From contig NC_043003.1 of NCBI RefSeq assembly GCF_006345805.1, forward strand, positions 94,736,001-94,800,000: DNA of 64,000 nucleotides, read 5' to 3'. The position numbers were made by a program, and so were the translations under genes. This DNA is from Octopus sinensis. Its lineage: Eukaryota. Positions 3,608-51,357 of this stretch are shown in pieces (the stretch's first letter is position 1; the number at the start of each line of letters is the position of its first letter). The notes under the pieces are model-generated. The model was not told the origin of the DNA. It worked only from the letters and a program-made list of their open reading frames with translations, and did not search any database.

Positions 3608-3667
<60 letters not shown>

Positions 3668-3870
3668 TGAAGGCGGCGAGCTGGCAGAATTGTTAGCATG
3701 CCGGGCAAAATGTTTAGTGGTATTTCGTCTGCCACCACATTCTGAGTTCAAATTCCACCGAGGTCAATTTTGCCTGTCACCCTTTCAGGGTCAATAAGTT
3801 AAGTACCAGTGAAACACTGGGGTTGATGTAATTGATGTAATCCCCCAAAAAAACATTGCTGACCTTGTAA
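1765..3870 (+). mobile_element. Head-to-tail cluster of about 6-7 copies of a ~200 bp tRNA-derived SINE (family B) separated by (ATT)n
   Basis: The motif GGCGGNGAGCTGGCAGAATCGTTAGC..TTCTGAGTTCAAATTCCNCCGAGGTC..AAGTACCAG..CACTGGGG recurs at about 1765, 2058, 2351, 2600, 2805 (partial), 2958 and 3670. GAGTTCAAATT is B-box-like. Confidence 0.85.
3169..3609 (+). mobile_element. Unclassified interspersed repeat X, copy 1 (internally deleted)
   Basis: Aligns by eye with 11833-12260 (+) and 17041-17598 (-), sharing GACACTGGGGTA..CCCATCATGACTA..CAGAGGTGAATTATTCAAACC..CAACACATGGCTATGATGCTCC. Confidence 0.8.
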
Positions 3871-4950: not shown

Positions 4951-4954
4951 AAAG

Positions 4955-5325
4955 GAGTGGCTGTGTGGTAAGTAGCTTGCTTACCAACCACATGGTTCCG
5001 GGTTCAGTCCCACTGCGTGGCACCTTGGGCAAGTGTCTTCTACTATAGCCTCGGGTCGACCAAAGCCTTGTGAGTGAATTTGGTAGACGGAAACTGAAAG
5101 AAGCCCATCGTATATATATGTATATATATGTGTCTGTGTTTGTCCCCCCAACATCGCTTGACCACCTATGTTGGTGTGTTTACATCCCTGTAACTTAGCG
5201 GTTCGGCAAAAGAGACTGATAGAATAAGTACTAGGCTTACAAAGAATAAATCCTGGGATCAATTTGCTCAACTAAAGGCAGTGCTCCAGCATGGCCACAG
5301 TCAAACAAGTGAAACAAGTAAAAGA
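4955..5325 (+). mobile_element. Bipartite tRNA-derived SINE (family A): head/core, TA-rich microsatellite, right arm
   Basis: A-box-like TGGCTGTGTGG, B-box-like GGTTCAGTCCC, core CCTTGGGCAAGTGTCTTC; right arm ends GAAACAAGTAAAAGAGTAAAAGA. Many copies in the window. Confidence 0.9.
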
Positions 5326-5717
5326 GTAAAAGACTATTAGTATTATCCATGTTTCTGTTTTTTTATGAAATCTTGTATTGAATTGTCTGGTACTATCCTC
5401 AGTCTTTTTGTCAACCATTTTGGTTACTAAAGAAAGATCTGGAGATTGGGATTTCATTTCCTAGACCTGGTGGTGCATTATGTTCTTGAGAAAAACTCTT
5501 CATGTCATGTTGTTCTTCAGTTACTTCAACATTTGATGTGTGGTACACTGTGCAACCTGTTCAGACAACATTGATTTGATGGAGGAAGTGAGCTAATGTA
5601 CAGAACGAACAATTGATCACTATAAAGAAATCATTTGTGCAAGTCGTTCAGCATAAAAGCTGAACACTCATATGTTGTCTTCAATGAGAGAGTCCATCAT
5701 TATTATTATAGTCAGTA

Positions 5718-6439: not shown

Positions 6440-6850
6440 ATATTTTATTTATTACACTATTGTATGACTGAGCGCCCTCGCATCGATTCAATTCATTTCG
6501 TTTCGTTTCATTTCCTCCAAGTAAGTTTTTATATATATGTATCACTGACGAAGAGAGGGCTCTTAGTAGCTAACTCTGAAATCGGTCCGATATGGTAATA
6601 ATGGAATTTTTTAGAAATTTCTGTCGACCTTTTTTCGAGTAGCGTGCGTATTGTGAAAAAATTATATGGTTAATGGACAATATGTCCAATTTTTCGGCAT
6701 ATTTGGCATTAGAATTTTTTTCCTTTGCCCTCATTTATGAATTGTTTATAAATTTAACCGTTAAAGGTATAATTTAATATGCTGGCCATTGATGAGATTT
6801 TTTCGAGAAAATTTTTTTTTTTTCGAAAAGAATTTTATCCTCACATTTGA
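6440..6850. mobile_element. Penelope-like-derived insertion next to (TA)n, carrying a hammerhead fold
   Basis: The reverse complement of 6700-6850 matches 40870-41010 (AGGAT..CAGCATATTAAA..TACCTTTA(A)CGGTTAAA). Contains the CUGACGA..GAAA fold. PLE assignment is inference. Confidence 0.55.
6539..6593 (+). ncRNA. Minimal type I hammerhead ribozyme fold (near-intact)
   Basis: CUGACGA 6545-6551; stem II AGAG/CUCU (6552-55/6574-77); GAAA 6578-81; loop UCGG; GUC triplet ending 6587; stem I GUAUC(A)/(C)GAUAU with the closing pair mismatched. Confidence 0.6.
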
Positions 6851-6877
6851 TATATATATATATATATATATATATAT

Positions 6878-7050
6878 GGAAAAAAAGTAAAGATAGAAAA
6901 TGCTAACATAATTTTATAAAAAACATTTCAGTACCGGTTTCAGTCATTGAGACTTTTTCAACTGTAACAATTAAATAATTAAATTTAGAAAAATTAAAAG
7001 AAAAGTTTTTTTAAAAGAATATTTGTATAGAGTTCAAATACAATTGGCAT
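6878..7050 (-). mobile_element. ~170 bp AT-rich element adjoining (TA)n; second copy at 13325-13497
   Basis: Near-identical inverted copy at 13325-13497; carries a hammerhead fold. Confidence 0.7.
6929..6964 (-). ncRNA. Minimal type I hammerhead ribozyme with U3-A8 core variant
   Basis: The minus strand reads CAG UUGAAAA AGUC ucaau GACU GAAA CCGG UA CUG: stem I CAG/CUG, stem II AGUC/GACU, palindromic ACCGGU stem III, GUA cleavage triplet. Confidence 0.65.
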
Positions 7051-7621: not shown

Positions 7622-8610
7622 TCAGGCTGAGTAAAATGTAAGCAACGTTTTGACACATGAAATTCATCACAATATATTTCAACAATGTGGAAATTTTATA
7701 CATCAAAGTAAGTACCATTACAATCAACACATTTTTGCCAACGAGTTACAAGTTTGTTTATTCTGGTAACATAGAAATCTAGAGTTCTGGAGCTGATGAA
7801 CTCTTAGAATGCACTTTCAGCATCAGTTTGATTTTTGAACTCCTTCTCTTGCATGAAACCATCAAGGTGCTTGTAAAAGTGGCAGTCAGTAGGAGAAAGG
7901 TCTGGGATATAAGCTGGGTGGAGAAGAACTTCGCAGACAAGTTCTCTCAACTTCTGGAGTATCATTAGTGATACGTATGGTCGAGCATTGTCGTGAAAAA
8001 TTATCGACCCTTTTCTATTGAACTGTGTGGGATGGAGGACTCGCAGTTTTCTGTTCATTTTGGCAATTTCATGACAATATGTTTCTGCAGTAATGGTTTT
8101 TCTGGGTTTTAAGAAGTTATAGTGGAAGGGTCCAAGAGTACACCACCAAACATTAACCCTAACCTTGTTTTTGAAGAGCTCAGCTTTATGGAAGGTTTTC
8201 AGTGCTTCATTTTGGTCCAACCACTGCTAAGAATGTTTTTTATTATTATACAGAATCCAATTTTTATCACAAGTTACAAAACTGTCAAGAAACGAATTTG
8301 TCTGGTTATGGAGAAAAAGCAACAAGCAAATTTCTGTATTCAAATCGTGTAGTACCCATTTGTCAAACTTTTTTGATTTTTTGATTGCATGCAAATGGTT
8401 GCAGGTAGTATTCTGGCTAACTTGAAGTTCTTTTGCCAGTTCTTGAGTGGTTTTACATAGCTCTTTCTCGATGACAGTCTTTAATTGACCATCATTGATG
8501 GTTGATGGGCATCCACTATGCTCATGATTTTTAAGGCTCAGGTCTCCACTGCAAAACCATTTTCAAGCTGACCACTCACTGGTTATTTTCTCACCAAATG
8601 CTTCGTTGAT
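7622..8610 (-). mobile_element. Mariner (DD34D) transposon remnant, 5'-truncated, transposase pseudogene
   Basis: INEAFG..WFCSGDLSL..SGCP (HTH), DKWVLHDL, VTCDKNW (first D), FHDNARPY, then 34 residues, then SPTDCHF. Stops and frameshifts are present. TA followed by a TIR-like end TCAGGCTGAG at 7620-7631. Confidence 0.9.
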
Positions 8611-9000
8611 AGAATGTTCTTTGTGCCATTCGGTAACAACTTTAGCTGTGTGAATTGGTGCATTATCATCCTGAAGATTGCGTTTCCCTTCGGAAACAGT
8701 TCTGCAGGCATAAGATGAATTTGATCAGATAAAATGCTTAAATCAACTTGATTACTAATCCTGCCATGAAGGGAAACCATTGGGCTGGTGGATTTCCAGA
8801 TCATCAAAGATCCTCTTCTGTGTTTAACAGTTGGAAGAAGGCAGCATGGGTCAAATGCTTCTTTTGGCTGTCTCCATACATATACTCGGCCGGTGGTTGG
8901 AAATAAGGTAAAGAATGTCTCGTCTAAGAAAATAACATTCTTCCACTGCTCTAGGGACCTATTCTGTTCAACTTCTTGCCTAGAGCGAGCCCATAGCAAT
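8611..9000 (-). mobile_element. Tc1-type transposase fragment
   Basis: WKNVIFLDETFFTLFPTTGRVYVWRQPKEAFDPCCLLPTVKH, then after a 1-nt frameshift QDDNAPIHTAKVVTEW. Confidence 0.85.
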
Positions 9001-9696
9001 ATCATATCTTCTCCACTATTTCAGTATTACATGTTAAAAGTGAAACAAAAACATTTCTCTATTTTATGTCAAATGCTTTCACTTTAGCAATAAAAATAAT
9101 AATAACAATTGAATTATATGTAGTAAGTAATAATTAAAATCAAACTAAAGTATAATATAATCGTAACATAACAAAAGTAAAAATAGCAATTGGTATAAAA
9201 TTGCATCAATGACTTGAACTTGAATAAGTGGTTTCACATGAATGGGAATAAATTAAAAATAAAATTAGCGTGCAGAAATGGAATAGTCCAGATGGAGCTG
9301 TGCTTTTACATTAGATTATCTGCTAATTAGCTAGCATTAGGTATCTATATGAAGTTTGGCTGTATGTAATATCTGTTTTCTCGAACAGCCGCTCCTACAG
9401 AATACTGCTGTTGGTTTATTTCTTATACATAAAGGACTAAAGCTTCAACTGCTTACTGCTTTCTGACTCATCGTAAGGTTTGTTGTTATTATTATTACTG
9501 TTTAACTATTGTTATCACGTTTGTTGGTTCCTCATAAAGGAAACATTGTTGTGTTGCATTTGTTAAATAATTGTAAACTGTAACCCTCCCCCTTTGGGAG
9601 AAGGAGCTTTGGTTATTGTTTAAAAATTGAATTGTGTCCCTGTTTGGGGAAATTGACAATATTTTCACCGTTTACACGGAAGCATTTTTGTTAGAA

Positions 9697-11806: not shown

Positions 11807-12545
11807 TTATTATTATTATATTATTATTATTATTGAATGAGAGTGCAGTGCATGCCATCAATTTGACACTGGGGTAAAATATACAAAGCCCAGTATACCC
11901 ATCATGACTACCTGTCTGATAAGTGTACACCAGGCACATGCATCACAACCATATGTGCACGACATGGTGATCTCATATCAAGATAAACAGCGCTTGACCT
12001 TGCAGGTGGGGCTCAGTTAGAATTTTCTTCTGGTTGAGTAACCCATACCGCTCAAAAGGTCCCTGTATAAGGGTTGTTTAAGGATGTTGAACGAAACACC
12101 CATGTTTCCAGAGGTGAATTATTCAAACCTCAAAGAATCCCTCTCAACACATGGCTATGATGCTCCCCCACTACTTCTGCTTGTGATCAGAGATGCACAT
12201 ATCGTCAGCCAACTGGTTAAGGTCAAACAACTGACAAGCAAATCTGTGGTATTGAGAAGAATTATTATTATTATTATTATTGTTATTAATATTATTATTA
12301 TTATTACTATTATTATTATTGTTGTTGTTGTTGTTGTTATTATTAGGGAGGCAACCTGGTAGAATCGTTAGCATGCCGGACGAAATGCTTAGCGGTATTT
12401 CACCTGTTGCTACATTCCGAGTTCAAATTCCACTGAGGTCGACTTTGCTTTTCCTCCTTTTGGAGTCGATAAATTAAAGTACCAGTGAAACACTGGGGTC
12501 AATGTAATTGACTAGTCCCCTCCCCAAAAATTTCAAACCTTGTGT
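11575..12545 (+). mobile_element. SINE B (11575-11770), repeat X copy 2 (11833-12260), SINE B (12345-12545)
   Basis: Same motifs as the copies above, joined by (TTC)/(ATT)n tracts. Confidence 0.8.
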
Positions 12546-13099
12546 CTCTAGCAGAAAGGATTATTTTTATTATTACTACCATTATTATTATTGCCGCTGT
12601 TGTTGTTGTTGTTATTATTACTTTCACTGTTATGTGTATAGATCTGATTTATGTACACTCGAGGTATCGCATGTAACCTTAGAAACATAGTTGTTTTATT
12701 GCCAGCAAACTCTCAATATCGATTAATCACTTCAGCCATTGTCACACACAAAAATATATTCACAACTGGCACCATTATTATCATATTTTCTCTAATCTGA
12801 AAGTGTATTGTGCTGCAATATTTTCATACAGATTTCTTCTTATTGAAGAAAGCTAACAGCATTTGAAATAGGTGAACTTTATGTTCTTACTCTCTTATTT
12901 AAGTCATTGGACTGCAGCACACTGGGGTACCACCTTGAGGTTTTTAGTCAATCAAATTGAGCCTAGTGTTTTTTTCTTTTATTTTTTTAAAGTCTGATAT
13001 TGTTTCTATTCCTATAACTGCTAAGTTATGGGGATGGAAACAAACCTATACTGGCTGTCAAGTGGTTAGGAGATAAACACAGATACACATGTACATACA

Positions 13100-13147: not shown

Positions 13148-13502
13148 CACAGGTGTGGCTGTGTGGTCAGAAGCTTGCTTCTCAACCATATGGTTCTGGT
13201 TTCAGTCCCACTGCATGGCACTTTGGGCAAGTGTCTTCTACTATAGCCCCAGGCCAACCAAAGCCTTGTGAGTGGATTTGGTAGATGAAAACTGGAAGCC
13301 CATCATATATATATATGTATATATGCCACTTGTATTTGAACACTATACAAATATTCTTTTAAAAAATCTTTTCTTTTAATTTTTCTAAATTTAAATATTT
13401 AATTGTTACAGTTGAAAAAGTCTCAATGACTAAAACCGGTACTGAAATGTTTTTTATAAAATTATTTTAGCATTTTCTATCTTGACTATTTTTCCATATA
13501 TG

Positions 13503-13571
<69 letters not shown>

Positions 13572-15916: not shown

Positions 15917-16246
15917 CCTATCCATCCATCTATCCTCTCAGTCGAAGTCGACTCTCGGTTAGTCGTTGGATCAGTGTCCTCCAGTCAGTTCTATCCCAGG
16001 TCGCTTCCTTCAGATTGGCTATATCCATTCCAGTATCACTCTTGATGGTGTCAAGCCAGCGGATTCCTGGTCGGCCTCTTCCTCTCTTACCACTGACCAT
16101 TCCGAGCATGATGTCCTTCCCCAGGGATTTTCTCTGCATAATATGACTGAAATATGTCAATCTATGCTTGGTGATCCTAGCTTCTAGCGACATTTTCGGC
16201 CTGATCTGCTTAAGAACTTCTCCATTGGTGAGCCTCGCTGTCCATG
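15917..16246 (-). mobile_element. 5'-truncated RTE (BovB-type) LINE 3' end
   Basis: WTARLTNGEVL..RLTYFSHIMQRKSLGKDIMLGMVSGKRGRGRPGIRWLDTIK..DRTDWRTLIQRLTESRLRL, followed by a (GATA/GATG) tail. Confidence 0.9.
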
Positions 16247-16759
16247 AAAAACTGAAGCAATGTAGAACAAAATGACCCACTAAGAAACACAATCAAACTA
16301 CAAACACGAACTGCAATAACGTATGGTCTTGTTATCATATATCTTAACTACTCTATGTTTCCTAACCTTTATATACTAGTTAAGCATAACATTTTTTAAT
16401 TAAAGTCAAATTAAAATTCTGATGCTCAGTCTTTCTTTTGGTTCTTCATAGCTATGAAATCATTTCCTTTTCTGTTTTTTAAGATTCTGAATCAGTATGA
16501 TGAAAGCACCATCAGAATCAGGTCAGATCAGATATGGGGGCATTGCCACTGCTGTACATCACAGAATCCACCATCTATTGATATTTACTTCGGTCACCCT
16601 AGGCAACCCTCCAAGCAATGTCCCAGTTAGTTTCCATCCGTATGAAATACTTCCTCATCTGCCATGACCATGAGACATGTGGCTGACCAACAATAAGCTG
16701 TCACCTCAGCCAGATTCTCAGATTATCATAATCACCTCACTGATAATTATAATTCTTTC

Positions 16760-17025: not shown

Positions 17026-17598
17026 TAATAATAATGATAAATGCCCTGATGTAGTATCAGGCAATGGCTCTCATGGCTTCTGATCTTAACTGATTGGAAG
17101 TGTTATCATGTACATTGTTTTGTCTTGGTATAAAAGATGGGCTACATCAAATATTCTGCTCAATACCACAGATTTGCTTGTTAGTTGCTTGACCATAACC
17201 AGTTGAGCATGTCGCTTGATGGCTGATGATATGTGCATCTCTGATCATGAGCAGAAGTAGTGGGGGAGCATCATAGCCATGTGTTGAAAGAAATTCTTTG
17301 GGGTTTGAATAATTCACCTCTGGAAATATGGGCGTTTTGTTCAACATCCTTAAAAAACCCTTACTCAGGAACCTTTTGAGTAAGATGAGTTACTCGACCA
17401 GAAGAAAATTCTAACTAGGCTCCACCTGCAAGGTCATGCGCTGTTTATCTTGATATGAGATCACCATGTCGTGCACATATAATTGTGATGCATGTGACTG
17501 GTGCACCCTTATCAAATGGTTAGTCATGATGGGTATATTGGGCATCATATATTTGTACCCCAGTGTCACTTTGATGGCATGCACTGCTCTCTCACTCA
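16760..17598 (-). mobile_element. Repeat X copy 3 (17041-17598, longest), then (ATT)n, then SINE B (16760-16932)
   Basis: Reverse complement of the X and SINE B motifs, in the same order as the + strand copies. Confidence 0.8.
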
Positions 17599-17789
17599 AT
17601 AATAATAAGAAGAATATAAATAGCACTACTAATATAAATATAGCACTACTAGGCACTGCACACATCCTATGTAAAACTCTTTCAATACAATAAAAATAAG
17701 AGCACCACAAAAAACCACAGCACATACCTCAGGCACACAGAGCTGTACTCAGAAGTGCAGTGAAAGTACATGATAAAACTAAGACTACT

Positions 17790-17862
17790 GAATGATGATG
17801 ATGATATGATGATGATGATGATATGATGATGATGATGATGATGGTGATGATGGTGGTGGTGG

Positions 17863-17960
<98 letters not shown>

Positions 17961-17999
17961 GTGGTGGTGATGATGATGATGATGATGCGATGATGATGC

Positions 18000-18032
<33 letters not shown>

Positions 18033-18093
18033 ATGATGATGATGATGAAGATGATGGTGATGGTGATGGTGATGATGGTGATGATGGTGGTGG

Positions 18094-18125
<32 letters not shown>

Positions 18126-18175
18126 CGATGATGATGATGATGATGATGATAATGATGATGATGAAGATGATGATC
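17790..18175. repeat. Long compound (GAT)n/(GGT)n microsatellite
   Basis: Directly visible; explains the poly-Ser/His ORF. Confidence 0.95.
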
Positions 18176-19429
18176 AATAACTACTCAGACATTATCATTA
18201 CTATCGCCCTCATCAGTAAATTCAGAGCACTTTAAGAGAATTTGAACTCAACACATGAACTTTTAATGCTCAACACCTTCATCCATTTTCCTTAAGTAAT
18301 GATTAACAGAAGAGAAAAAAAAGCATCAAATTTTCACTTTAATATCATGACTTGCTTATCAAAAATCAATTCTATAAAAAAATGTTTCTAAGAATTGGAA
18401 TATTTGATTCTTTGACCCAGTCTAGACACTTTATCATATCATAAACTTAGTAATTAAGTATCTCTTACAACTGACTATGTTGTCATTTTACTAAGGTTAA
18501 ATTGCTTTGCTTTCTAATTTTCAGCTTGTCTGATCTAATCATATAATTAAAGACAATTTGTAATTAATTCTCACTGCATTAATTATTGTAATATGTTCCA
18601 GATGTAAATTTTATCACTCAACTAATTTAACTGTGAATGAACTAAAAAAAGGATTTTTTAGTATATACTGAAGACTACATGACTATGTGTGCACATGTAT
18701 GCCTATGTATATAGATATATCTACATATATGAGTGTGTGTGTGTATGTATGCATGCGTTTATGTATGTATGTATGTATGTATGTATATATGTAAGTTTGT
18801 ATGTATGTGTGCATGTATGTATATACATGCAGAGACAATTGGTAAAATCAGCTGTAATAGATATATAATACTGTACATTTTGATTAGTATATGTATGTGT
18901 GTGTATGGGTGTATGTGTGTTTGTGCATGTCTTTGTGTCTGTGTTTGTCCCCCCACCATCACTTGACAACCGATGTTGGTGTGTTTACATCCTTGTAACT
19001 TAGCAGTTCAGCAAATGGGACTGATAGAATAAATACCAGGCTTTACAAATAAATAATAAGTACCAGAGTTGATTTATTCCACTAAAATTTTTCAAGGCAC
19101 TACTCCAGCATGGTGGCAGTTTAATGAGTGAAACAAGTAAAAGATAAAGAATATAAAAAGTGAAAGAAAGGGAATTATATCAGACAAATATTTCAGATTA
19201 AGAAGTCTGGAATAGTTTTGTTTTTTATCACTGTTTTATTTTCCAGTACACCTCACTCATTTATTCAATTTACATATCACTTAAAAAAGTTTAAAAGATA
19301 CATTGATTTCAATATTTTATTTATGTATTAATTACTACATGTTTCCTAATTTCATTAATATCTTATTAAAATGATAAAGAATTCTCATGTATTCTACATA
19401 TATATCATAATTTCATTTTAATTTATATA

Positions 19430-19456
19430 TTTCTTTTTCTTTCTTTGCAGGTGAGT
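19430..19456 (+). promoter_or_regulatory. Juxtaposed 3' and 5' splice sites (candidate recursive splice site / zero-length exon)
   Basis: TTTCTTTTTCTTTCTTTGCAG|GTGAGT, with AG at 19449-50 and GT at 19451-52. No AG dinucleotide between about 19380 and 19448. Confidence 0.55.
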
Positions 19457-19699
19457 ATTTATACCTATATATATATCTAAATATATATATCATTAAAGAA
19501 CTTGGTAAGATAAGGATTTTTTAATTCGTTCTTTTTTTAATATTTTCACATTAATATGTATGCATACTTTTATTTACAGTCTATATTCATTTAGCTAATA
19601 TCGCTACTTCACTAAGGAGGTGAACTGGTAGAGTCATTAACACACCGGGAAAAATGCTTAGTGGCATTTCATCCATCTTTACATCCTGAGTTCAAATTT

Positions 19700-19955
19700 C
19701 ACTGCTGCTTAAAAAGCACCTGCACTGATGCTGTGCTCATGCCGGTGCTGTGTAAACACATCCATGCTGGTGGCACATAAAAAGCACCTAGCACACTCTT
19801 TTAGGTAGTTGGCATTGGGAAGAGCATCCAACCATAGAAACCATGCCACAACAGACAACTGGAGTCTGGACAGCTCTCTGCTAGCCAGCTCCATGTTAGA
19901 CTGTCCAACTCATGCCAGCATGAAAAACAGACATTTAACAATGATGGTGATGGTG
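19700..19955 (+). mobile_element. SINE family C fragment ((GAT)n tail)
   Basis: AAAAGCACC units, GTTGGCATTGGGAAGAGCATCCA, CATGCCAGCATGAAAAACAGACATT, (GAT)n. Confidence 0.7.
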
Positions 19956-23379: not shown

Positions 23380-24140
23380 TGATGGACATGGAAAATAAGT
23401 AAAAGCAAGAGGAACTATCTTCAGTATATGTGAAAGAGATCAGCAATTGAAGAGAGTAGTTATTTGGTCAAAACAGCAATATAAGATATGAAAACAAGAA
23501 AAGCAACTAAGCCATCAGGTATTGTTGCCGAAATGGTGAAAATATCTGACAAAGCAGTGTTTAAGCTAGTCAGTCACATAACCAAGCAGGTTCTACAGAA
23601 AAGTACCACACTCAATGGCCAGCATAACCAGATAATCTTTACCTGCAACAAGAGCAAAGGAGACGCTTTGAAAAGAAGCAACCACAAAGGTATCAAACTG
23701 ACAGACCAGGTTATAGAAGTAAGGAAAACAGTATTAGCATGATTAATTAAGAAAAGAACCAGCTTAGCTGAGAAGCAGTTCAGATTTTTCCCATGTCACA
23801 GTACTACTGATGTTTTTTTTTATAATGAGATGAACGGCAAGAGAAATTTTTACCTAAAAGTAAACCTCTTTACCTAGTATTTGCTCATATTGAGAAGAAG
23901 GCCTCTCACAAGATACTACAATCTGTAATCTGGTGTTTCTTGATAAAACTAGGTAGGTAAACAGCTTATGAGAGCAATGCAAGCCATATAGAACAATGCA
24001 ATCAGCAAAGTGATAATTGGCAAAGAGTTCTGTATGTAGTTTAGTGTGTAGGTAGGTGTTCACCAAGGGCTGATTCTCAAACCCCTCTTAGTATAAAGTG
24101 CATGAGGTCTAAATGGTATTTAGAGCTCTTTGTGCATCCC
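23380..24140 (+). mobile_element. Decayed RTE-X-type reverse transcriptase, N-terminal part
   Basis: GIVAEMVKIS, KGDALKRSNHKGIKLTDQV, KQFRF..STTD, VHQG motifs with many stops. Confidence 0.8.
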
Positions 24141-27894: not shown

Positions 27895-28450
27895 ATAGAT
27901 GAATCACTACCTGATCTACAGAAGAAATTTCAGGTGTAGAAGCAAAGCTTGGAATCTAAGCGGCCTTGGAGTTAATGCAGCAAAAACCAAAATCTTTGTA
28001 AGTAGGAAAACAGACAAATCACAAGTCCCCTCAGAGAGATGGCCCTGCTTGATATGTAAGCAGGGTGGTGGTAGAAACTCCACACAGCGTACCCAGTGCA
28101 AGTTCTGGACACATAAGAGGTGTAGCAGTATCACAGGATGGTTAATGTATAAAATAGTATTTGTGTGAAGCAAATGTGTAGGTACCATAAGCACTAAATA
28201 TGTTCAGACAATAGACTCCCTCAAATGCTTAGCGGGGATCATTAGACAGCTTCTGGTAGCTAGGCGACCAAGTTAACAATGGTGGAGGATTTCTGAAAAT
28301 GTAGTTGCTAGAATGAGAATGGACTAGGAAAAGTTCAGGGAGCTTCTACCTTTATTGGAAACTAAAGTCCTTTCTGTCAGAGTGAAACGCAGATTGTATG
28401 ATGCTTGTGCATGTACAGTTATGCCACATGGCAGTGAAATGTGTGTGTAC
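27893..28450 (+). mobile_element. Decayed RTE-X-type reverse transcriptase, C-terminal part with Cys/His insert
   Basis: ESLPDLQKKFQV, LGVNAAKTK, WPCLICKQG..QCKFWTHKRCS, KFRELLPLL, HGSE. Confidence 0.8.
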
Positions 28451-28465
28451 CATTGGCAATTTTTT

Positions 28466-28640
28466 TTCCTCCGTCTTCCTTTCTTTGGATCTTTCCTTTT
28501 CCTAGGTTTCTGACGAAGAGCTCCGCTCAAAACATTAAACCTTCCTTCTTTCCTTCTTTCCTGAGCGTCCAATAATACTATACTTGTTCCACGTCCTTGC
28601 GTTGTGTTTTCTCTTTGTGTTTTCATGTTTGGATTAACTA
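28466..28640 (+). mobile_element. ~170 bp element ending in (TA)n with a decayed hammerhead fold (second copy 36536-36700)
   Basis: AGGTTT CTGACGA A GAGC tcc GCTC AAAAC ATT AAACCT; the core GAAA reads AAAA. Confidence 0.65.
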
Positions 28641-28654
28641 TATATATATATATA

Positions 28655-29060
28655 ATATAAATTGGACATGGGCGATCATTGTATTCTTTCTTGTCTTGAG
28701 GTTCACAGTCAAACGGCAGGGTGGATTTGCATAAAAAATGGCACACATGTGGAGACAGGTGCACAGATTGGAATGCAGTTTGTACTTTTTTTCTAACCCC
28801 CATACTTATTGAGAAAATCGATTAAAACGTTTTCTAATGGAATTTCCCTCTTTCTTTTGCCATTAAAACAACCAGCTGCTTAGAAGCTGTTTTCTGACGG
28901 GGCGTGGGTCAAGAAATTTTCATATAGCTGGAGGCTCCAATCAAAACAAGGGACCCGAAATGATAAGGTTGACAAATGCTGTTATAGATTATGCCTAACT
29001 GAAAATGATCACAGCCACATCATCCAAACAGACCAGGTGAAACCAGGCTTAGCTGCTAGT
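28655..29060 (-). mobile_element. Helitron/Helentron-type non-autonomous element
   Basis: The minus strand starts ACTAGCAGCTAAGCCTGGTTTCACCTGG and ends TTTATATTATATA; same terminal style as 29486 and 45239. Confidence 0.45.
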
Positions 29061-33885: not shown

Positions 33886-34789
33886 CAAGGGGGTACCCAA
33901 AAGTAACCAGAAACGTTCTCTGTAATTCCAGCTTCTGCTACTAGAAGTCACTTGATGCGACCCTCAGGCATCAGTGTGCTGACTGGCATTGTCCAGTGAG
34001 GTCATACTGCTACATGCTGCGTCTTTGTTTTGCATTGCTTCTCCCATGTTTGTCAATTTTTGCTATGGCTGAAACAAAGGAACAGTGTGCTTCCATGAAA
34101 TTCTATTTTCTGTTGGGGAAAACAGCAGTTGAAACATTTCTCATGATTCAAACAGCTTACAGGGCCACTGCCATGAACAAAACACAAGTTTATAAGTGGT
34201 TTTCATGCTTTTAGAATGGTCACTTATCGCTTGAGGGTTAACCTCGTTCAGGGCAACTGTACACCTCTCAAATGAATGAAAACATTATGAAAATTCCTGA
34301 ACTGATCTTGGAAGACCGTCACCGAACAATTGATGAACTTGTTGATATGACTGGTGTATTCTGGTGCTCCTGCAATCGAATTTTGAGTGAGGAACTGCAA
34401 ATGAAAGGAGTTGCAGCAAAATTTGTGCCTTGCTTGCTTACAGAAAATCAAAAGCAGTCGTGACTGAATGCATATTGACCATTGAACTGAATGCATATTG
34501 TCAAGTGAAAGAAGTTGATCCTGACCTTTTTTTGAAGGTTATCACTTGTGATGAAAGCTGGTGATACAGAATTTGCAGATGTGAAAGAGGTGAAGTAAAA
34601 AAACAAGGAGGGGTTAAAAGGCATCGCTTCGCAAGAGTTCTAGCACTGCTTCCAACAGTGGTAAACACGTCTGTACTGATGCATTGCTTCAGATGGAGAA
34701 TACTTTGAAGGCGATAATAGTGTAAACATGTAAAATTAAGTGAATGAAATAATATTGCAAAATTCCAGTTTCTTTTGGGTACCCTTTTG
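33886..34789 (+). mobile_element. Internally deleted mariner with both TIRs and TA target duplication
   Basis: TA|CAAGGGGGTACCCAAAAGTAAC..GTTTCTTTTGGGTACCCTTTTG|TA. MAETKEQCASMKFYFLLGKTAVET..AAKFVPCLL..VITCDESW then jumps directly to FADVKEV..CIASDGEYFEGD. Confidence 0.9.
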
Positions 34790-35599: not shown

Positions 35600-36065
35600 A
35601 ATAAACTATAGTTGTGAAGACCGGTGACATGTAAAAAGCACCATTCGAGCATGGTCGATGCCAGTGCCACCTGACTGGTCCCGTCCCAGTGGCACATCAA
35701 AAGTACTATTCGAGCATGTTCGATGCCAGTGCCAGCTGACTGGCCCATGAGGTCGCAAGCAAAAAGCACCATTCGAAGGTGGTCATTGCCTGTGCCGCTT
35801 GACTGGCTCCCATGCCGGTGGCACATAAAAAGCACCATTCAAGCATGGTTGATGCCAGTACTGCCTGACTGGCCCTTGTGTCGGTGGCACGTAGAAAAGC
35901 ACCCACTACACTCTTTGAGTGGTTGGCGTTAGCAAGGCATCAAGCCGTAGAAACTTTGCCAGAACAGATTGGAGCCTGGTTCAGCCTTCTGGCTTCCCAG
36001 CCCTCAGTCAAACCGTCCAACCCATGCCAGCATCGGAAGCAGATGTTAAACGACAATAATAATGA
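35600..36065 (+). mobile_element. SINE family C with internal ~62 bp tandem units
   Basis: About 5 units ending GTAAAAAGCACC, then GAGTGGTTGGCGTTAG..AACCCATGCCAGCATCGGAAGC and a tail. Confidence 0.8.
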
Positions 36066-36243
36066 TGAAAAGTATTTTGCATTAATCCTTCAGATTAATG
36101 TGAAAACTATTTTAATTGTAACTGAACAAAAGAACAAACATTATATGTGTGTCATTGTGTATGTGAATGTATGTACATGTGTGTGTGAGTATGTGTGTGT
36201 ATATGAGTGGAAGCAATATGTATATATGTTTATGTATAAATAT

Positions 36244-36291
<48 letters not shown>

Positions 36292-36408
36292 TATATATAT
36301 ACCTATAATATATATATATATACCATATAATATATATATAATATATATATATATAATATATATATTTATGGTATATATATATATATATATATTATACCAT
36401 ATAATATA

Positions 36409-36448
<40 letters not shown>

Positions 36449-36456
36449 TATATATA

Positions 36457-36500
<44 letters not shown>

Positions 36501-36535
36501 TATATATATTATATATATATATATACATATATATA

Positions 36536-36700
36536 TCCTCTGTCTTCCCTTCTCTGGATCTTTCCTTCTCCTATGTTCCGACGAAGAGCTCCGCTCAAAA
36601 CATTAAACCCTCCTTCTTTCCTGAGCGTCCAATAATACTATATTTGTTCCACGTCCTCGTGTTGTTGTGTTTTTTTGTGCTTTCATGCTTGGATTAACTA
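36536..36700 (+). mobile_element. Second copy of the 28466 element in (TA)n
   Basis: CCGACGA A GAGC tcc GCTC AAAAC ATT AAACCC; both flanks are (TA)n. Confidence 0.7.
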
Positions 36701-36765: not shown

Positions 36766-36904
36766 CATATATTATATATATATTATTATATATTATACAT
36801 ATATATATAATATTAATTCGAGACAAAACCACTATTTTGCAAAACAAACAAGGAAAGACTTAATCAATACATAAAAATTTTTTTTTATATAAAGGAATAA
36901 ACCG

Positions 36905-36947
36905 CCACTACAATCGTTTCATGTCTTCAATGACATTCGTCAGGTGG
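36905..36947 (-). ncRNA. Minimal type I hammerhead ribozyme, core intact
   Basis: CCAC CUGACGA AUGUC auugaa GACAU GAAA C gauu G UA GUGG. All core nucleotides present; GUA triplet; predicted cut between 36909 and 36908. Confidence 0.75.
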
Positions 36948-38576
36948 ATTTTCGATCTAAAATATCAATATATTAAAATATAAGTTTAAAATAATAAAAT
37001 TATCAATGATAAAATATAAATATATATAATCTATATATAATCTATATATAATCTAAAATAAACCCTATAAACAATTGAATATAAAGAAACCTATTATTAA
37101 AGTTCTCATATTTAAAGATGTACAAAAAACAAAAAACAAAAACAAAAAACAAAACAAAAAACAAAAAAAAAAAAAAAACAAAAAACAAAAAAAAAAAACA
37201 AAAAAAAAACAAAAAACAAAAACAAAGACAAAATAAAAATAAACTATATATACACACATGCTCATACACATATAACTAAATATATATAACCATATCTAAA
37301 TACATACACTAACTCACACCAATATATATATCTCTATACATACACATAAAAACGTCTAGGCAACGATAAATGAATAAATTAATAAAATAGCCAAATACTT
37401 CAACACATTACTTATTCATACTCCCTCACACACACATACAACCCACAGTCATAAACAATATACATATACCCGCTCACACATACATATACATACATACAGA
37501 ACTCGATATATACACCAATATATTCACACCCACACCCATACAGATAAATAAATTACGCAAACAATCACACACACACACACACATTCACACATACATAAAC
37601 ACTCAAAAGAAAAATAAACAATTCTTTGCGCGTGGCGATCGAACGTTTTTTTAAAAATTATGAATGGAAAGAATGTAATAATATTTAATCAACGTAAATA
37701 TACAGAATTTACTCCAAAATCATTAATAAACCAATCATGATAATGAAACCCATATATACATATAATGATAAAACACCCTTTACCATACACAATAATACCT
37801 ATATAGCAATCCCCATAATACATTCACACACAAAAATACACATACGTAAAACACACACCCATAACATATACATATACCCCCTCACATATACATATACATA
37901 CGTACTAAACTCGATATATACAACAATATATTCACACCCACACCCATATAGATAAATAAATTACACAACCAAATACGCACACACACACACATTCACACAT
38001 ACATAAACACTCAAAAGAAAAACAACATATCTACACATAATACGATATATAAAATACTCCATAAGTAACCAGATTATCATAAGTAACAAGATTAACATAG
38101 GAGGAAAAAAATACATACATCTCCTAATCTGTTTTAATTTATGAAGTGAATTCAAACTCTAGCCGTTATAACTTTAAACAAAATTACGTTACCATAGAAA
38201 CCGAACATATTTATAAAAATTCTTAGCTCGGTGAACGAACGTCATTTAAAATTATGAATGGAACAGAATGGAATTATAAAATTCTTTGCGCATGGAGAAC
38301 GAACGTTATTTAAAATTATGAATGGAATAAATGGAATAATATGTTAAACACTTAAACAGACAGAAATTATTACAAATTCTTTAATAAAACTACCATGATA
38401 AACGAAAACTCATATATACATATAACGATAAAATCTTTCTTTACTAAACACTATAACATACCTATATAGCAATCCCCCTATCTATACATTCACACACAAA
38501 TACACACATGTAAAACACACACCCACTACATATACATATACCCACTCCACTCACACATACATATACATACGTACAA

Positions 38577-38617
38577 ACCTGACGAATGTCATTGAAGACA
38601 TGAAACGATTGTAGTGG
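38577..38617 (+). ncRNA. Inverted copy of the same hammerhead, stem I truncated
   Basis: Core and stems II/III are identical; the 5' strand of stem I is AAAC instead of CCAC, leaving only 2 bp. Confidence 0.55.
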
Positions 38618-38807
38618 CGGTTTATTTCTTTATATTAAAAAAAATTTTTATGTATTGATTAAGTCTTTCCTTGTTTGTTTTGCAAAATAGTGGTTTTGTC
38701 TCGAATTAATATTATATAATATTTTACTATAAAATTGGATTTAATCCTAAATCTGATTTTTTCCCTGTAAATTTGGATTTATTCCCTAATATTTATTATT
38801 ATACATA

Positions 38808-38879: not shown

Positions 38880-39560
38880 TTAGCGTCCGTTTTCCAAGCT
38901 AGCATGGGTTGGACAGTTCAACTGGGGCCTGTGAAGCCAGAAGGCTGCATCAGGCCGTCTGATCTGGCAGTGTTTCTATGGCTGGATGCCCTCCCTAACG
39001 CCAACCACTCTGCGAGTGTAGTGGGTGCTTTTTAATGCCACCCGCACAGGAGCCAGATGGAGCTGGCAAACGCCACGAACGGATGGTGTTTTTACGTGCC
39101 ACCGGCACGGGGGCCAAGCGAGGCTGGCAATGGACATGAACGGATAGTGCTTTTACGTGCCACCGGCATGGAGGCCAGACGGCCACGAACGGATGGTGCT
39201 TTTTACATGCCACCAGCACGGGGGCCAGGTGAGACTGGCAACGGCCATGAACAGATGGTGCTTTTTACGTGTCACCGGCACGGAGGCCAGTCGGAGCGGC
39301 GCTGGCGACGGCCATGATCGGATGGTTCGCTTACTTGTCACCGGCACTGTATCACAGCCGCAATTTCCATTGATGCTGATCAACTTCGATTTTGGTTCTG
39401 CTTTCTGATATCTGATTTGATTTGGTTTGATTTGATTTTGATTTTGATTTTCACTTGCCTCAACGGGTCTTCACAAGTGGAGTTTTGTGTCCCAAGAAGG
39501 AAAGGTATGTATAAGTCGACTGGCTACATACCAGGTAGAGGCCATGGGTTATGGTCTCAT
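38880..39560 (-). mobile_element. SINE family C with ~5 CpG-rich tandem units and its 5' region
   Basis: (CAT)n tail at 38857-38879 and repeated TTTTACGTGCCACCGGCAC. Confidence 0.85.
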
Positions 39561-39562
39561 AT

Positions 39563-39594
<32 letters not shown>

Positions 39595-39595
39595 C

Positions 39596-39644
<49 letters not shown>

Positions 39645-39657
39645 CATATATATATAC

Positions 39658-39697
<40 letters not shown>

Positions 39698-39715
39698 CTA
39701 TATATATATATATAC

Positions 39716-39765
<50 letters not shown>

Positions 39766-40543
39766 ACCGTATAATATATATATATATATCAGCAAGGAGA
39801 GTGGAGTAAGCAATTCATTTTATTACATAATTCTATTCATCTCATTGAAATGTCAATCCAACAGTTGCAAAGTTATGTAATAAAACAACTTGCTCACTCT
39901 ATCCTGCATGCTAATATTCATATAAATTCTGCAGATATTTATGGATTTTCAGATATCTCATCATATCCATTTCCTTTTTATATTCCTAGCTGACAGCCAT
40001 ACATACATACATACATACATACATACATACATACATACATACATGCATACATACGTACATACATACATACATACATACATACATGCATACACATATATAT
40101 ATGATATGTATATATATATATAAAACATTGTTTCATCCTCATCCTGTTAACATCTACTTTTCCATATTTGCAAGAGTTAGATGGAGATCCTGTCGTGAAC
40201 CCTTAGCTATTTCCATGCAAGGTTATATTTCCCCATCGTCAGAAATGAATGATAGGGCATGTATGACAGTGTAACAGGAACACTAAACACAGTCATATAT
40301 ATACACACACTCACACACACACGCGCGTTTTCACACACACACACACACACAAGTATACACACATGACAAGCTTCTTTCAGTTTCCATACAGCAAGTTTAT
40401 TCACAAGGATTTAGTCAACCCAAGATTACAGTAAAATGCATTTGCCCAATTGAACCCAAAACCTTGTGATTCTAATACAAACTTCTTAACCAAATAGCAA
40501 GCAACACCTGACTATGTATATATATGTGTGTGTGTGTGTGTGT

Positions 40544-41290: not shown

Positions 41291-41357
41291 TAACTCCTAC
41301 TAAATGTGTTGACTGTTCTTTTCTTTTGTTTGTTCACTCATTCGTGTGTGTATAGGT

Positions 41358-41836
41358 GCATATTCTGAACGCCTTACTTCCCTGGGCATGGACGCATTGA
41401 AACTCCGACGTCTGGCAGCTGACTTGGCAGACACCCATAAAATTATTAACCATCTTACAAACAATAACTCTGAGCACCTTTTCAAACTCCACCCGTCTAA
41501 CACCCGTGGACATATTTACACAGTAAGAAAACAACACAGCTCCCATGACTTTAGGAAACATTTTTTCATGCTGAGAGTTGCTGAAGCATGGAACAAACTG
41601 CCGGCATTAGTTGTTAGTTGTCGGAGCACTGCATCCTTCAAAACTTCCATGCTTTCTGAGATTCGCCAACACTACACCTGATTTTCCCCCCTCCATACAC
41701 ATGCAAGCATGTATCTGACTCATACATTGTTCGCTTTCCAGACATTTGTACATTACTGCATATACTTTATATGCACTTTCTGACAAGTTGTGGTGCACCT
41801 GAGCACTGTATGTAATAATTTCATTATTATTATTAT
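41358..41836 (+). mobile_element. 5'-truncated CR1-type LINE 3' end
   Basis: YSERLTSLGMDALKLRRLAADL..NTRGH..RKHFFMLRVAEAWNKLP..SFK, then a 3' UTR and (ATT)n tail. Confidence 0.9.
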
Positions 41837-43439: not shown

Positions 43440-44340
43440 TATGTACAAATCATTCAATACCAACCACAAGTCAGCCCTCAGCATCAGTCCGACCATTTAG
43501 ATGTTGCCACCTACAATATCAAGTGAGTTCTCTGGCTGACTCACACACTCTGCTATATAAGGTACACAAGAGGTTATGCTGGATATTCTATTAGTAGATG
43601 GTAGCTACATCTATGACCACACTTGTAGCTGTCTTTGAAAAGCAGATATGACTACATTGGTCAGATAAAAGAGACTCTTTTGTTCTCTTCTCCGGAAGTG
43701 GGTTCACATCTTCCATATATTTACCAGCATGCTTCAACCCAGTGAATTCTGTAACATCAGTAGCAGTCAAATTCCTTCTGATGCAATATCTTCTCAAGTG
43801 TTAGTATAGTTATTGATCTTTCTAAATGTATTTTTAAGATTGTCTTTGAAATACTTGCTCGACTTGCACTGGGGACACTTTCCTTTCTCCAGTTTACCAG
43901 ACAACACCTGTTTCGGCTTGCAGATATCCTATAAATGGGCAAGATGACCAGACCATATAAGATGGTGTTTTGTAATCATAGACTCAGCACTCATTACTTT
44001 CACAAGCTACAGTACTCTTGTATAAGGTACATGAGATCATTATGTGATCTTCAGGGTATTGCACAAGTATTGCTGGTGGAATCACTGGAGACATTAGATA
44101 TGCTTGCAATGGGTTATCCAGGTCTCACATCCATACAACACTATTAAGACACATGCATGATAGAACTCAATTCTCATTGCTTCTAGGATGTCTGACTGCA
44201 GCAAGAGCCTCAATCCATGTTTTCCAAAGGCAACACAGGCCTTAGAAAGTCTGTAACTGACATATTCATCCTATAATAGATTTAAATAGTGTGTTATCAA
44301 AGCAGAGAAACACATCTACGGTTTTAACATTTAACCCTTT
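43440..44340 (-). mobile_element. Decayed RTE-type LINE 3' region
   Basis: SYRLSKACVAFGK, KQVLSGKLEKGKCPQCKSSKYFKDNLK, EDIAS, HQRTH; many stops. Confidence 0.7.
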
Positions 44341-45602: not shown

Positions 45603-45840
45603 GATTAGACTGGCTCAAATGGATGTGCAAGGTTAAATATTTAGAAGAATAGAAAGCAAAGTTCTCACTGATATTTCAAAATTTTGTAATGAATTTCCAC
45701 AACTGTTTCTACAACTAAAATACAAAGGCAATCATCCATATAATCATAGCATAATCAATATATAAAAATGTCTATTTAATTAATTTGAATGAGATGAATA
45801 AACCATTTCATCATGAACAAAATATGTATATATAGGTGCA

Positions 45841-46225
45841 GGAGTGGCTGTGTGGTAAGTAGCTTGCTTACCAACCACATGATTCTGGGTTCAGTCCCAC
45901 TGCGTGGCACCTTGGGCAAGTGTCTTCTACTATAGCCTTGGGCCAAACAAAGCCTTGTGAGTGGATTTGGTAGACGGAAACTGTAAGAAGCCCTTCGTAT
46001 ATATGTATGTGTGTGTATATGTTTGTGTGTCTTTGTCCCCCCCAACATCACTTGACAACCGATGCTGGTGTGTTTACGTACCTGTAACTTAGCAGTTCTG
46101 CAAAAGAGACTGATAGATTAAGTACTAGGCTTACAAAGAATAAGTCCAAGAGTTGATTTGCTTGACTAAAGGCGGTGCTCCAGCATGGCCGCAGTCAAAT
46201 AACTGAAACAAGTAAAAGAGTAAAA
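45841..46225 (+). mobile_element. SINE A
   Basis: Full head, core, microsatellite and right arm. Confidence 0.9.
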
Positions 46226-46374
46226 GAGTATATGCATGTGTGTGTGTTTGTGTGTATGTGTGTGTGTGTGTATGTGTGTGTGTTTGTAGATATATATATA
46301 TATACATATATATATTTCGTTTTTGTATTTGACTTGCAAGATTTTTTATGTGAATTTGTGTGTTGAAGCATATT

Positions 46375-46867: not shown

Positions 46868-47130
46868 TGCAGCGCCGCCCCGACTGGCCTCATGCCGGAG
46901 GCACGTAAAAAGCACCATCCGATCGTGGTCGTTTGCCAGCCTCGTCTGGCACCTGTGCCGGTGGCATGTAAAAAGCACCCACTACACTCACGGAGTGGTT
47001 GGCGCTAGGAAGGGCATCCAGCCATAGAAACATTGCCAGATCAGACTTGGGCCTGGTGCAGCCTTCTGGCTTCCCAGACCCCAGTTGAACCATCCAACCC
47101 ATGCTAGCATGGAAAACGGATGCTAAACAA
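46868..47130 (+). mobile_element. SINE family C (2 tandem units)
   Basis: Same unit and tail motifs as other family C copies. Confidence 0.8.
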
Positions 47131-51289: not shown

Positions 51290-51306
51290 CAGTGTTATTA
51301 TTATTA

Positions 51307-51357
<51 letters not shown>

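What the first reader, a model, noticed from the sequence alone, without database searches (positions are those of the whole stretch)
19380..19456. Textbook recursive-splicing (ratchet point) signature in unique intronic DNA
Seen: a 17-nt pyrimidine run, then GCAG, immediately followed by a perfect GTGAGT. There is a ~68-nt AG-free zone upstream with branch-like TTAAT/CTCAT, and no repeat or ORF context. Established: AG|GT zero-length exons subdivide very long introns in Drosophila and in long vertebrate neuronal genes. Inference: the window is one large + strand intron spliced stepwise. I am not aware of recursive splicing being documented in cephalopods.
Basis: partly seen in the sequence, partly recalled or inferred. 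Interest (0 to 1): 0.75.

Follow-up and report, generated by a model that had tools for sequence, protein, structure and literature searches.

The report
Lone recursive-splice-like motif, function unproven
The sequence really does place a near-perfect intron-end signal directly against a near-perfect intron-start signal. However, nothing available here shows that this DNA is transcribed on that strand, so it is at least as likely a rare accident of repeat-rich DNA as a working stepwise-splicing site.

Summary
The motif is exactly as described: a 17-nt pyrimidine run (19430-19446), GCAG (19447-19450), then GTGAGT (19451-56). It is by far the best juxtaposed acceptor|donor site on either strand: 29.5 bits on my rough matrix, against 14.8 for the next + strand site and 22.3 for the best - strand site. 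No simulated window reached that score (0/300 Markov, 0/300 block shuffles). Motif counts give about 0.005 such sites per 64-kb window. That is rare for one window, but it means hundreds of sites by chance in a Gb-sized genome.

The supporting details are ordinary:
- AG-free gaps of at least 69 nt cover 20% of the window.
- The pyrimidine run looks like a decayed (TTTC)n repeat and the donor abuts a decayed (TA)n repeat.
- The site lies in a 416-bp single-copy gap between two SINE copies.

The interpretation could not be tested. I found no coding exon anywhere in the window and no strand asymmetry in composition or signals. No RNA data or orthologous sequence was reachable, and the taxon could not be confirmed.

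My estimates: fortuitous motif about 0.55, genuine recursive splice site about 0.25, boundary of an unannotated exon about 0.1. Interest is low to moderate until RNA or conservation data exist.

The parts
19380..19448 (+). AG-free stretch (69 nt) upstream of the acceptor AG. It is G-poor and A+T-rich.
   Evidence: Not unusual: the window has 110 AG-free gaps of at least 69 nt, covering 19.6% of its bases.
19418..19422 (+). TTAAT, a candidate branch point fitting yUnAy. The A is at 19421, 29 nt before the acceptor G. A second candidate, CTCAT, lies at 19384-19388 (63 nt before).
   Evidence: Read directly. The position is plausible, but the motif is trivial in this composition. Its role is inferred only.
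19430..19446 (+). 17-nt uninterrupted pyrimidine tract TTTCTTTTTCTTTCTTT, resembling a decayed (TTTC)n repeat.
   Evidence: The + strand has 9 pyrimidine runs of at least 17 nt in the window.
19447..19450 (+). GCAG, an acceptor-like 3' splice-site core. The AG is at 19449-19450.
   Evidence: acceptor part 16.1 bits on my rough matrix.
19451..19458 (+). GTGAGTAT, a donor-like 5' splice-site core. It matches 7 of 8 positions of GTAAGTAT, the U1-complementary consensus.
   Evidence: 13.4 bits. It is the best-scoring donor-like site on the + strand of the window.
19456..19495 (.). Degenerate (TA)n microsatellite directly abutting the donor motif.
   Evidence: In the self-BLAST, dozens of matches at 82-92% identity to (TA)n tracts across the window.
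19505..19510 (+). GTAAGA (TTG|GTAAGA), a moderate donor-like site 54 nt downstream. With the acceptor it could define a 54-nt 'recursive exon' (19451-19504) that has stop codons in two of three frames.
   Evidence: (6.9 bits). Chance of such a site within 54 nt is 0.08, and within 200 nt 0.26.
18887..19165 (+). SINE copy (family A, tRNA-like head, sense on +) bounding the single-copy gap on the left.
   Evidence: 11 other copies in the window at 66-78% identity. Polarity comes from the A/B-box-like head read.
19582..19704 (+). Start of a second SINE-like element (family B, sense on +) bounding the gap on the right.
   Evidence: copies at 2349, 2600, 3670, 5712, 12344, 14907 and others. Polarity read.

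Best explanation
Most likely this is a fortuitous juxtaposition with no dedicated function. A decayed (TTTC)n-type pyrimidine tract happens to be followed by GCAG|GTGAGT and then by a decayed (TA)n tract. It sits in a short single-copy remnant between two SINE insertions, inside a 64-kb stretch of transposon- and microsatellite-rich non-coding DNA.

If that strand is ever transcribed, the site would bind U2AF and U1 well and could be used sporadically. Nothing shows that it is part of a programmed stepwise removal of an intron.

What is shown: the motif, its rarity within a window, and its repeat-rich surroundings. What is inferred: the absence of function, from base rates and from the lack of any sign of a host transcript.
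For: **Base rate.** The expected number of sites this good is about 0.005 per 64-kb window (consistent). A 2-3 Gb genome would therefore hold roughly 200 by chance. In the one large genome with a careful census in the held library (mouse), only 20 recursive sites were found among 4.77 million sense-strand AGGT sites (PMC8797253).

**Components are typical local products.**
- Pyrimidine runs of at least 17 nt occur 9 times per strand.
- GTRAGT occurs 39 and 28 times on the two strands.
- 14% of the window is low-complexity and 31% is repeated within the window.
- The donor merges into a (TA)n tract.

**No evidence of a host gene or of + strand transcription.**
- No exon was found.
- There is no TA or GC skew.
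- Polyadenylation and splice hexamer counts are symmetric.

**No companion sites.** The next best + strand site scores only 14.8 bits, whereas fly recursive introns often carry several.

**Secondary features are ordinary.** This applies to the AG-free zone, the branch-like pentamers and the downstream donor.
Against: - For a single window the site is a clear outlier: 0 of 600 simulated windows reached its score.
- It combines the best acceptor-like and the best donor-like site of the + strand.
- In Drosophila, motif strength alone is a good predictor of recursive sites, which generally score above 0.85 on a normalised scale (PMC6110457).
- A moderate donor 54 nt downstream fits the exon-definition model of recursive splicing (PMC8797253).
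- The exon-free, transposon-filled 64 kb is what a very long intron would look like.
Confidence: 0.55

Rival explanations
1. It is a genuine recursive splice site (ratchet point) in a very long + strand intron. The upstream exon is first spliced to the acceptor at 19450, possibly after exon definition with the donor at 19505. The regenerated donor (exon end + GTGAGTAT) then removes the rest of the intron. Depending on whether 19505 competes, this is either a zero-length exon or a 54-nt recursive exon.
For: - The motif fits the published definition and is an outlier for the window (PMC6110457).
- The donor matches the U1-complementary consensus at 7 of 8 positions.
- A candidate branch A lies at -29.
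- A candidate downstream donor lies at +54. The 54-nt segment has stops in two frames, like a poison recursive exon.
- There are no exons in 64 kb. That fits the long introns where such sites occur: over 51 kb in mouse (PMC8797253) and the longest 3% of introns in flies (PMC6110457).
Against: - No host gene, strand, RNA or conservation evidence could be obtained.
- There is no strand asymmetry.
- SINEs lie mostly in sense on +. If sense insertions are disfavoured in genes, as in mammals (my own knowledge), that would point to the - strand.
- In large vertebrate genomes such sites are very rare, so chance motifs may outnumber real ones.
- There is no second candidate on the + strand.
Confidence: 0.25
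2. It is an ordinary splice-site boundary of an unannotated non-coding or poison exon. One form is a 54-nt cassette, 19451-19504, using the acceptor at 19450 and the donor at 19505. The other is an exon ending at 19450 that uses the GTGAGT donor. Such an exon would belong to an untranslated region, a long non-coding RNA or a cryptic exon.
For: - In mouse brain, 46 of 84 junction-supported intronic AGGT candidates turned out to be unannotated exons and only 19 were recursive sites (PMC8797253).
- The same paper describes cryptic exons that splice in a recursive-like manner.
- An acceptor and a donor 54 nt apart are both present.
Against: - The candidate exon is (TA)n-like, has stops in two frames and has no protein homologue.
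- The donor at 19505 is only moderate, and one this good is expected within 200 nt 26% of the time.
- An exon ending at 19450 would consist of the pyrimidine tract and lacks a credible acceptor upstream. The nearest AG, at 19378-9, follows A-rich sequence.
- There is no evidence of transcription.
Confidence: 0.1
3. The motif belongs to a dispersed repeat that happens to be single-copy in this window, for example the tail of the upstream SINE or a fragment of another element. It would then recur at many loci with no splicing role.
For: - The site is sandwiched between two SINE copies.
- 31% of the window is repeated within the window itself.
- SINE family A itself carries a donor-like TGGTAAGTA in its head, showing that these elements spread splice-like motifs.
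Against: - No other copy of 19166-19420, or of the core motif, exists in the window.
- The other copies of the upstream SINE end their similarity at about 19148-19165.
- This could not be tested genome-wide.
Confidence: 0.05

Closest known systems
Drosophila ratchet points (zero-nucleotide-exon recursive splice sites; Ubx, kuz, and the catalogues of Duff et al. 2015 and Pai et al. 2018, PMC6110457)
   Same: - A pyrimidine tract plus YAG sits directly against a consensus donor around a central AG|GT.
- The motif is very strong.
- The setting is tens of kilobases without exons.
   Different: - Fly sites are defined by RNA evidence (junction reads, saw-tooth, lariats) and show about twice the conservation of control AGGT sites. 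Neither is available here.
- Fly consensus favours GTAAGT, whereas this site has GTGAGT.
- The fly genome is small, so chance motifs are few. Here they are expected in the hundreds.
Vertebrate recursive splice sites with recursive exons (Sibley et al. 2015; mouse brain census PMC8797253; lungfish preprint 10.1101/2024.12.11.627982)
   Same: - An AGGT core with a strong pyrimidine tract and a U1-complementary donor.
- A possible downstream donor (+54) for exon definition.
- A large, repeat-rich genome.
   Different: - Vertebrate sites lie in the first or second introns (over 51 kb) of very long, brain-expressed genes and are highly conserved. Host gene, intron rank and conservation are all unknown here.
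- Such sites are very rare in mouse (20 in total).
Cryptic or poison exons and recursive-like cryptic exons in long introns (PMC8797253)
   Same: A strong acceptor is followed within tens of nucleotides by a usable donor, and the sequence is non-coding with stop codons.
   Different: In the described recursive-like cryptic exons the downstream donor is the strong one and the regenerated donor is weak. Here it is the reverse: 13.4 bits at 19451 against 6.9 bits at 19505.

Membership tests
Recursive splice site (ratchet point) | [quoted passage not shown] | tested here: met
   Y17-GCAG|GTGAGTAT at 19430-19458. It has the top combined score in the window and exceeds 600 of 600 simulated windows.
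Recursive splice site (ratchet point) | Lies inside a long intron, on the sense strand of a transcribed gene | tested here: inconclusive
   No exon was detected in 64 kb, which fits either a long intron or intergenic DNA. No strand asymmetry was found. The SINE orientation bias is uninterpretable. No annotated assembly was reachable.
Recursive splice site (ratchet point) | RNA intermediates: junction reads from the upstream exon to the site, saw-tooth coverage, segment lariats | not testable with these tools
   No RNA-seq data are accessible here. These are the criteria used in PMC8797253 and PMC6110457.
Recursive splice site (ratchet point) | Evolutionary conservation above neighbouring intronic sequence | not testable with these tools
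   No orthologous sequence was found. Frames near the site have no relatives in the protein collection, and a 26-mer scan of metagenome contigs found nothing.
Recursive splice site (ratchet point) | Downstream donor allowing exon definition of a recursive exon | tested here: inconclusive
   TTG|GTAAGA lies at 19505, 54 nt downstream, scoring 6.9 bits. A site this good occurs within 54 nt by chance 8% of the time, and within 200 nt 26% of the time.
Ordinary coding exon boundary | An open reading frame across the boundary with protein homologues | tested here: not met
   Frames crossing 19450 encode low-complexity peptides, with stops within 10 codons in two frames. There were no homologues at E<=1e-3.
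Dispersed repeat | Additional copies of the same sequence | tested here: inconclusive
   There is no second copy of 19166-19420 or of AGGTRAGT with a pyrimidine tract in the window. The rest of the genome could not be searched.

The most novel reading that the evidence does not exclude
The site is a working recursive splice site in a very long + strand intron of a cephalopod gene. If the window is indeed cephalopod, this would be the first recursive splicing reported in a mollusc or any lophotrochozoan. It would suggest that stepwise intron removal is an ancestral bilaterian way of handling very long introns.
Probability: 0.2. Interest if true: 0.5.

Novelty: not a real feature. Interest (0 to 1): 0.25.

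Why it matters
If real, it would extend recursive splicing from flies and vertebrates to a third major animal lineage with independently expanded introns and a large nervous system. It would also give a concrete locus to test. Specialists would not be very surprised: the mechanism uses the standard spliceosome and is already known on both sides of the protostome-deuterostome split.

The practical lesson goes the other way. In a Gb-sized, microsatellite-rich genome a 'textbook' AG|GT motif is expected a few hundred times by chance. Motif strength alone therefore cannot carry the claim. Strand, host gene, RNA intermediates and conservation are needed.

Tried and rejected
- **Orthologous or transcribed copies through public assemblies.** Exact look-ups of three window reading frames (17411-17725, 28324-28803, 8583-9005, all on -) found no record. 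A concatenate of 21 frames within about 1.3 kb of the site found no protein relative.
- **Host-gene exons.** Frames outside repeats, low-complexity DNA and obvious transposons were concatenated and searched against 5.8 billion proteins. The 58 frames of at least 64 aa gave no hit, and neither did the 91 frames of 44-63 aa. Frames under 44 aa and frames inside repeats were not searched.
- **Positive control and taxon.** The mariner-type frame 7804-8220(-) has 4771 relatives, the best at about 50% identity. The cluster look-up gave no informative organism; one hit is a nematode fragment. 'Cephalopod' therefore remains unverified.
- **DNA scan.** A 26-mer spanning the site found no match in metagenome contigs.
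- **Strand of transcription from composition.** TA and GC skews were not significant. AATAAA, ATTAAA and donor- and acceptor-like motifs were symmetric.
- **RNA genes.** Rfam and tRNA scans found none in the window.
- **The - strand AG|GT site at 23643.** Its score of 22.3 bits is reached in 105 of 300 block shuffles, and it lies antisense in a LINE fragment, so I rejected it as ordinary.
- **AG-free zone as evidence.** Rejected, because such gaps cover a fifth of the window.
- **Wasted search.** One literature search was badly phrased and returned nothing useful.

Full report
**1. The observation**

On the + strand the sequence reads ...atttatata TTTCTTTTTCTTTCTTT GCAG|GTGAGT atttatacc.... 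A script confirmed the coordinates:
- 17 pyrimidines at 19430-19446.
- GCAG at 19447-19450.
- GTGAGT at 19451-19456.
- The preceding AG at 19378-19379, which leaves a 69-nt AG-free stretch.
- TTAAT at 19418-19422, which places a candidate branch A 29 nt before the acceptor, and CTCAT at 19384-19388.

The description is accurate.

**2. Is it more than chance?**

The octamer AGGTRAGT alone is not unusual. It occurs once on each strand, against a first-order Markov expectation of 1.9 per strand.

The full juxtaposition is unusual.
- With a rough acceptor+donor weight matrix of my own (textbook-like frequencies, not a published model), the site scores 29.5 bits. The next best + strand AG|GT scores 14.8 and the best - strand one, at 23643, scores 22.3.
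- The donor part is the best donor-like site on the + strand.
- In 300 third-order Markov simulations the best site per window, both strands, averaged 18.4 (sd 2.1) and never reached 29.5.
- In 300 shuffles of 20-nt blocks the mean was 21.5 (sd 2.8), again with none at 29.5. These shuffles keep the pyrimidine tracts and microsatellites but break juxtapositions. Thirty-nine reached 25 and 105 reached 22.3.
- A component count agrees. Y10NYAG occurs 5 times (+) and 4 times (-), and GTRAGT 39 times (+) and 28 times (-), so about 0.005 juxtapositions are expected per window.

The site is therefore a real outlier for one window. The same rate implies roughly 200 such sites by chance in a 2-3 Gb genome (my extrapolation).

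**3. Supporting details that turn out to be ordinary**

- AG-free gaps of at least 69 nt occur 110 times and cover 19.6% of the window, because the DNA is 66% A+T and locally G-poor.
- Pyrimidine runs of at least 17 nt occur 9 times on each strand.
- The branch-like pentamers carry no information at this composition.
- A donor-like TTG|GTAAGA lies 54 nt downstream at 19505 (6.9 bits). With the acceptor it could define a 54-nt recursive exon with stops in two frames. A site that good is expected within 54 nt 8% of the time and within 200 nt 26% of the time.

**4. Surroundings**

The window is 34% G+C, and Tandem Repeats Finder returns 114 tandem-repeat rows for it, some overlapping. 31% of it has another copy within the window, and 14% is low-complexity.

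Self-comparison places the site in a 416-bp gap (19166-19581) with repeats on both sides:
- A SINE copy at 18887-19165.
- A second SINE-like element starting near 19582.
- A donor that merges directly into a degenerate (TA)n tract at 19456-19495.

So 'unique' holds within the window for 19166-19420. 'No repeat context' does not hold.

Transposon remnants are scattered throughout:
- Mariner/Tc1 transposase fragments at 7804-9005(-) and 33945-34561(+).
- LINE reverse-transcriptase fragments at 15930-16292(-), 23485-23739(+), 27899-28510(+), 41346-41681(+) and 44097-44270(-).

These were recognised by eye in the translations. Only the mariner frame 7804-8220 was confirmed by a search, with 4771 relatives. 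Rfam and tRNA scans found nothing.

**5. Is there a host gene, and on which strand?**

- **Protein searches.** I searched concatenated stop-to-stop frames outside repeats against the 5.8-billion-protein collection. The sets were 21 frames within about 1.3 kb of the site, the 58 longest frames of at least 64 aa, and 91 frames of 44-63 aa. None gave any hit at E<=1e-3. The mariner control shows that the separate 1.84-billion representative library holds eukaryotic transposon proteins; it was not run against the 5.8-billion collection searched, and whether that collection holds this species' own proteins was not shown.
- **What this means.** No coding exon of about 25-30 aa or more is detectable in the searched frames. 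Shorter frames and frames inside repeats were not searched. The window is either inside a very long intron or intergenic.
- **Strand signals.** The TA skew 95% interval is -0.012 to 0.032 and the GC skew interval is -0.039 to 0.017 on unmasked bases. AATAAA counts are 91 against 89, and donor- and acceptor-like motifs are symmetric.
- **SINE orientation.** This is the only asymmetry. Both families have their tRNA-like heads, with A/B-box-like motifs, in sense on +. Copies run 22:7 in favour of + (p=0.008), or 17:7 (p=0.06) if the cluster at 1.7-5.9 kb is collapsed.
- **Reading the bias.** A bias of this kind suggests strand-specific selection, which would mean transcription. In mammals (my own knowledge) the disfavoured orientation in genes is sense, which would put the gene on the - strand. 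The rule for this genome is unknown, so I treat it as uninterpretable.
- **Public assemblies.** Exact look-ups of three window frames found nothing. A 26-mer scan of metagenome contigs found nothing.
- **Taxon.** The source organism could not be established.

**6. What is it most likely?**

I weigh a chance rate of about 0.005 per window against the unknown density of real sites.
- If the genome is mouse-like, chance motifs outnumber real ones by about ten to one. Mouse has 20 recursive sites among 4.77 million sense AGGT sites, confined to introns over 51 kb in genes over 294 kb (PMC8797253).
- If it is fly-like, real sites would dominate. In flies recursive sites are described as abundant within long introns (PMC8605326, abstract), a census of about 10 billion reads found 130 recursively spliced introns, and recursive sites generally have strong motifs (PMC6110457).
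- Averaging over these possibilities gives my subjective estimates: about 0.25 for a genuine recursive site, about 0.55 for a fortuitous motif, about 0.1 for the boundary of an unannotated non-coding or poison exon, and about 0.05 for a repeat-borne motif.
- The 0.1 for an unannotated exon reflects the mouse census, where 46 of 84 junction-supported candidates were unannotated exons.

These are judgements, not computed probabilities.

**7. How it would work if real (inferred, following the cited papers)**

U2AF and U2 would recognise the tract, the AG at 19450 and a branch near 19421, perhaps helped by U1 at 19505 through exon definition. The upstream exon would be ligated to 19451. The new junction would recreate a donor (exon end + GTGAGTAT) that removes the downstream segment and leaves no trace in the mRNA. 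If the 19505 donor won instead, a 54-nt exon with stops in two frames would be included.

**8. Comparison with what is known, and novelty**

The motif meets the sequence definition of a recursive site. The other defining features could not be tested or were inconclusive here: a sense-strand position in a long intron, RNA intermediates and conservation.

Recursive splicing is established in Drosophila, human and mouse and has been examined in lungfish. In the held library no paper documents it in cephalopods; one paper mentions both terms, and only incidentally.

If confirmed, this would be a new member of a known kind in a new lineage. As it stands there is no demonstrated feature beyond the motif.

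**9. Verdict**

- The interpretation cannot be judged with the data reachable here.
- The best single reading is a rare but fortuitous motif.
- Interest is 0.25. If the recursive-splicing reading proved true, interest would be about 0.5.

Noticed in passing
window-wide; e.g. 4953-5337, 18912-19155, 45837-46232 (family A); 2349-2770, 3670-3835, 12344-12584, 19613-19704 (family B): Two tRNA-headed SINE families lie mostly in sense orientation on the + strand: about 22 copies against 7 (p=0.008), or 17 against 7 (p=0.06) if the cluster at 1.7-5.9 kb is collapsed. This may reflect strand-specific selection in a transcribed region or local duplication. Family A carries a donor-like TGGTAAGTA in its head.
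   Followed up: partly
36804-38718: A 1915-bp A+T-rich element (26% G+C) bounded by 142-nt terminal inverted repeats that are 99% complementary. The repeats start TATATAATATTAATTCGAGAC and the flanks are TA-rich. It contains a roughly 120-nt A-rich tract. It looks like a recently inserted non-autonomous DNA transposon.
   Followed up: partly
23643 (- strand): The second-best juxtaposed acceptor|donor motif in the window is GCGTCTCCTTTGCTCTTGTTGCAG|GTAAAGAT, at 22.3 bits. It lies antisense within a LINE reverse-transcriptase fragment (23485-23739). Its score is reached in 105 of 300 block shuffles, so it is ordinary.
   Followed up: yes
35621-35991(-), 38938-39392(+), 46870-47068(-), 50400-50860(+): A G+C-rich dispersed element built of tandem units of about 62 nt and 109-129 nt (GGTGCTTTTTACGTGCCACCGGCAC...). 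It makes the longest reading frames in the window, up to 163 aa with a repeated 'FYVPPA'. A similar peptide motif appears in frames at about 19700-19900. Its identity is unknown.
   Followed up: no
6850-7050 and 13323-13523: 201-nt inverted repeat arms, 95% complementary and 6.3 kb apart, bracket the mariner/Tc1 transposase fragments at 7804-9005. They could be a pair of inverted small elements or the ends of a composite transposon.
   Followed up: no
17792-18174; 51295-51580; 36216-36536; 39559-39789: Very long microsatellites: (ATG) x130, (TTA) x98, and (AT) x164 and x117. Trinucleotide arrays often sit directly 5' of SINE family B heads, for example (ATT)n at 3610-3668 before the head at 3670.
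   Followed up: no
whole window: Strong CpG depletion: observed/expected 0.36 overall and 0.30 in unmasked sequence, with GpC at 1.07 and TpG/CpA at about 1.3. This suggests germline methylation of the region. No CpG island was found.
   Followed up: no
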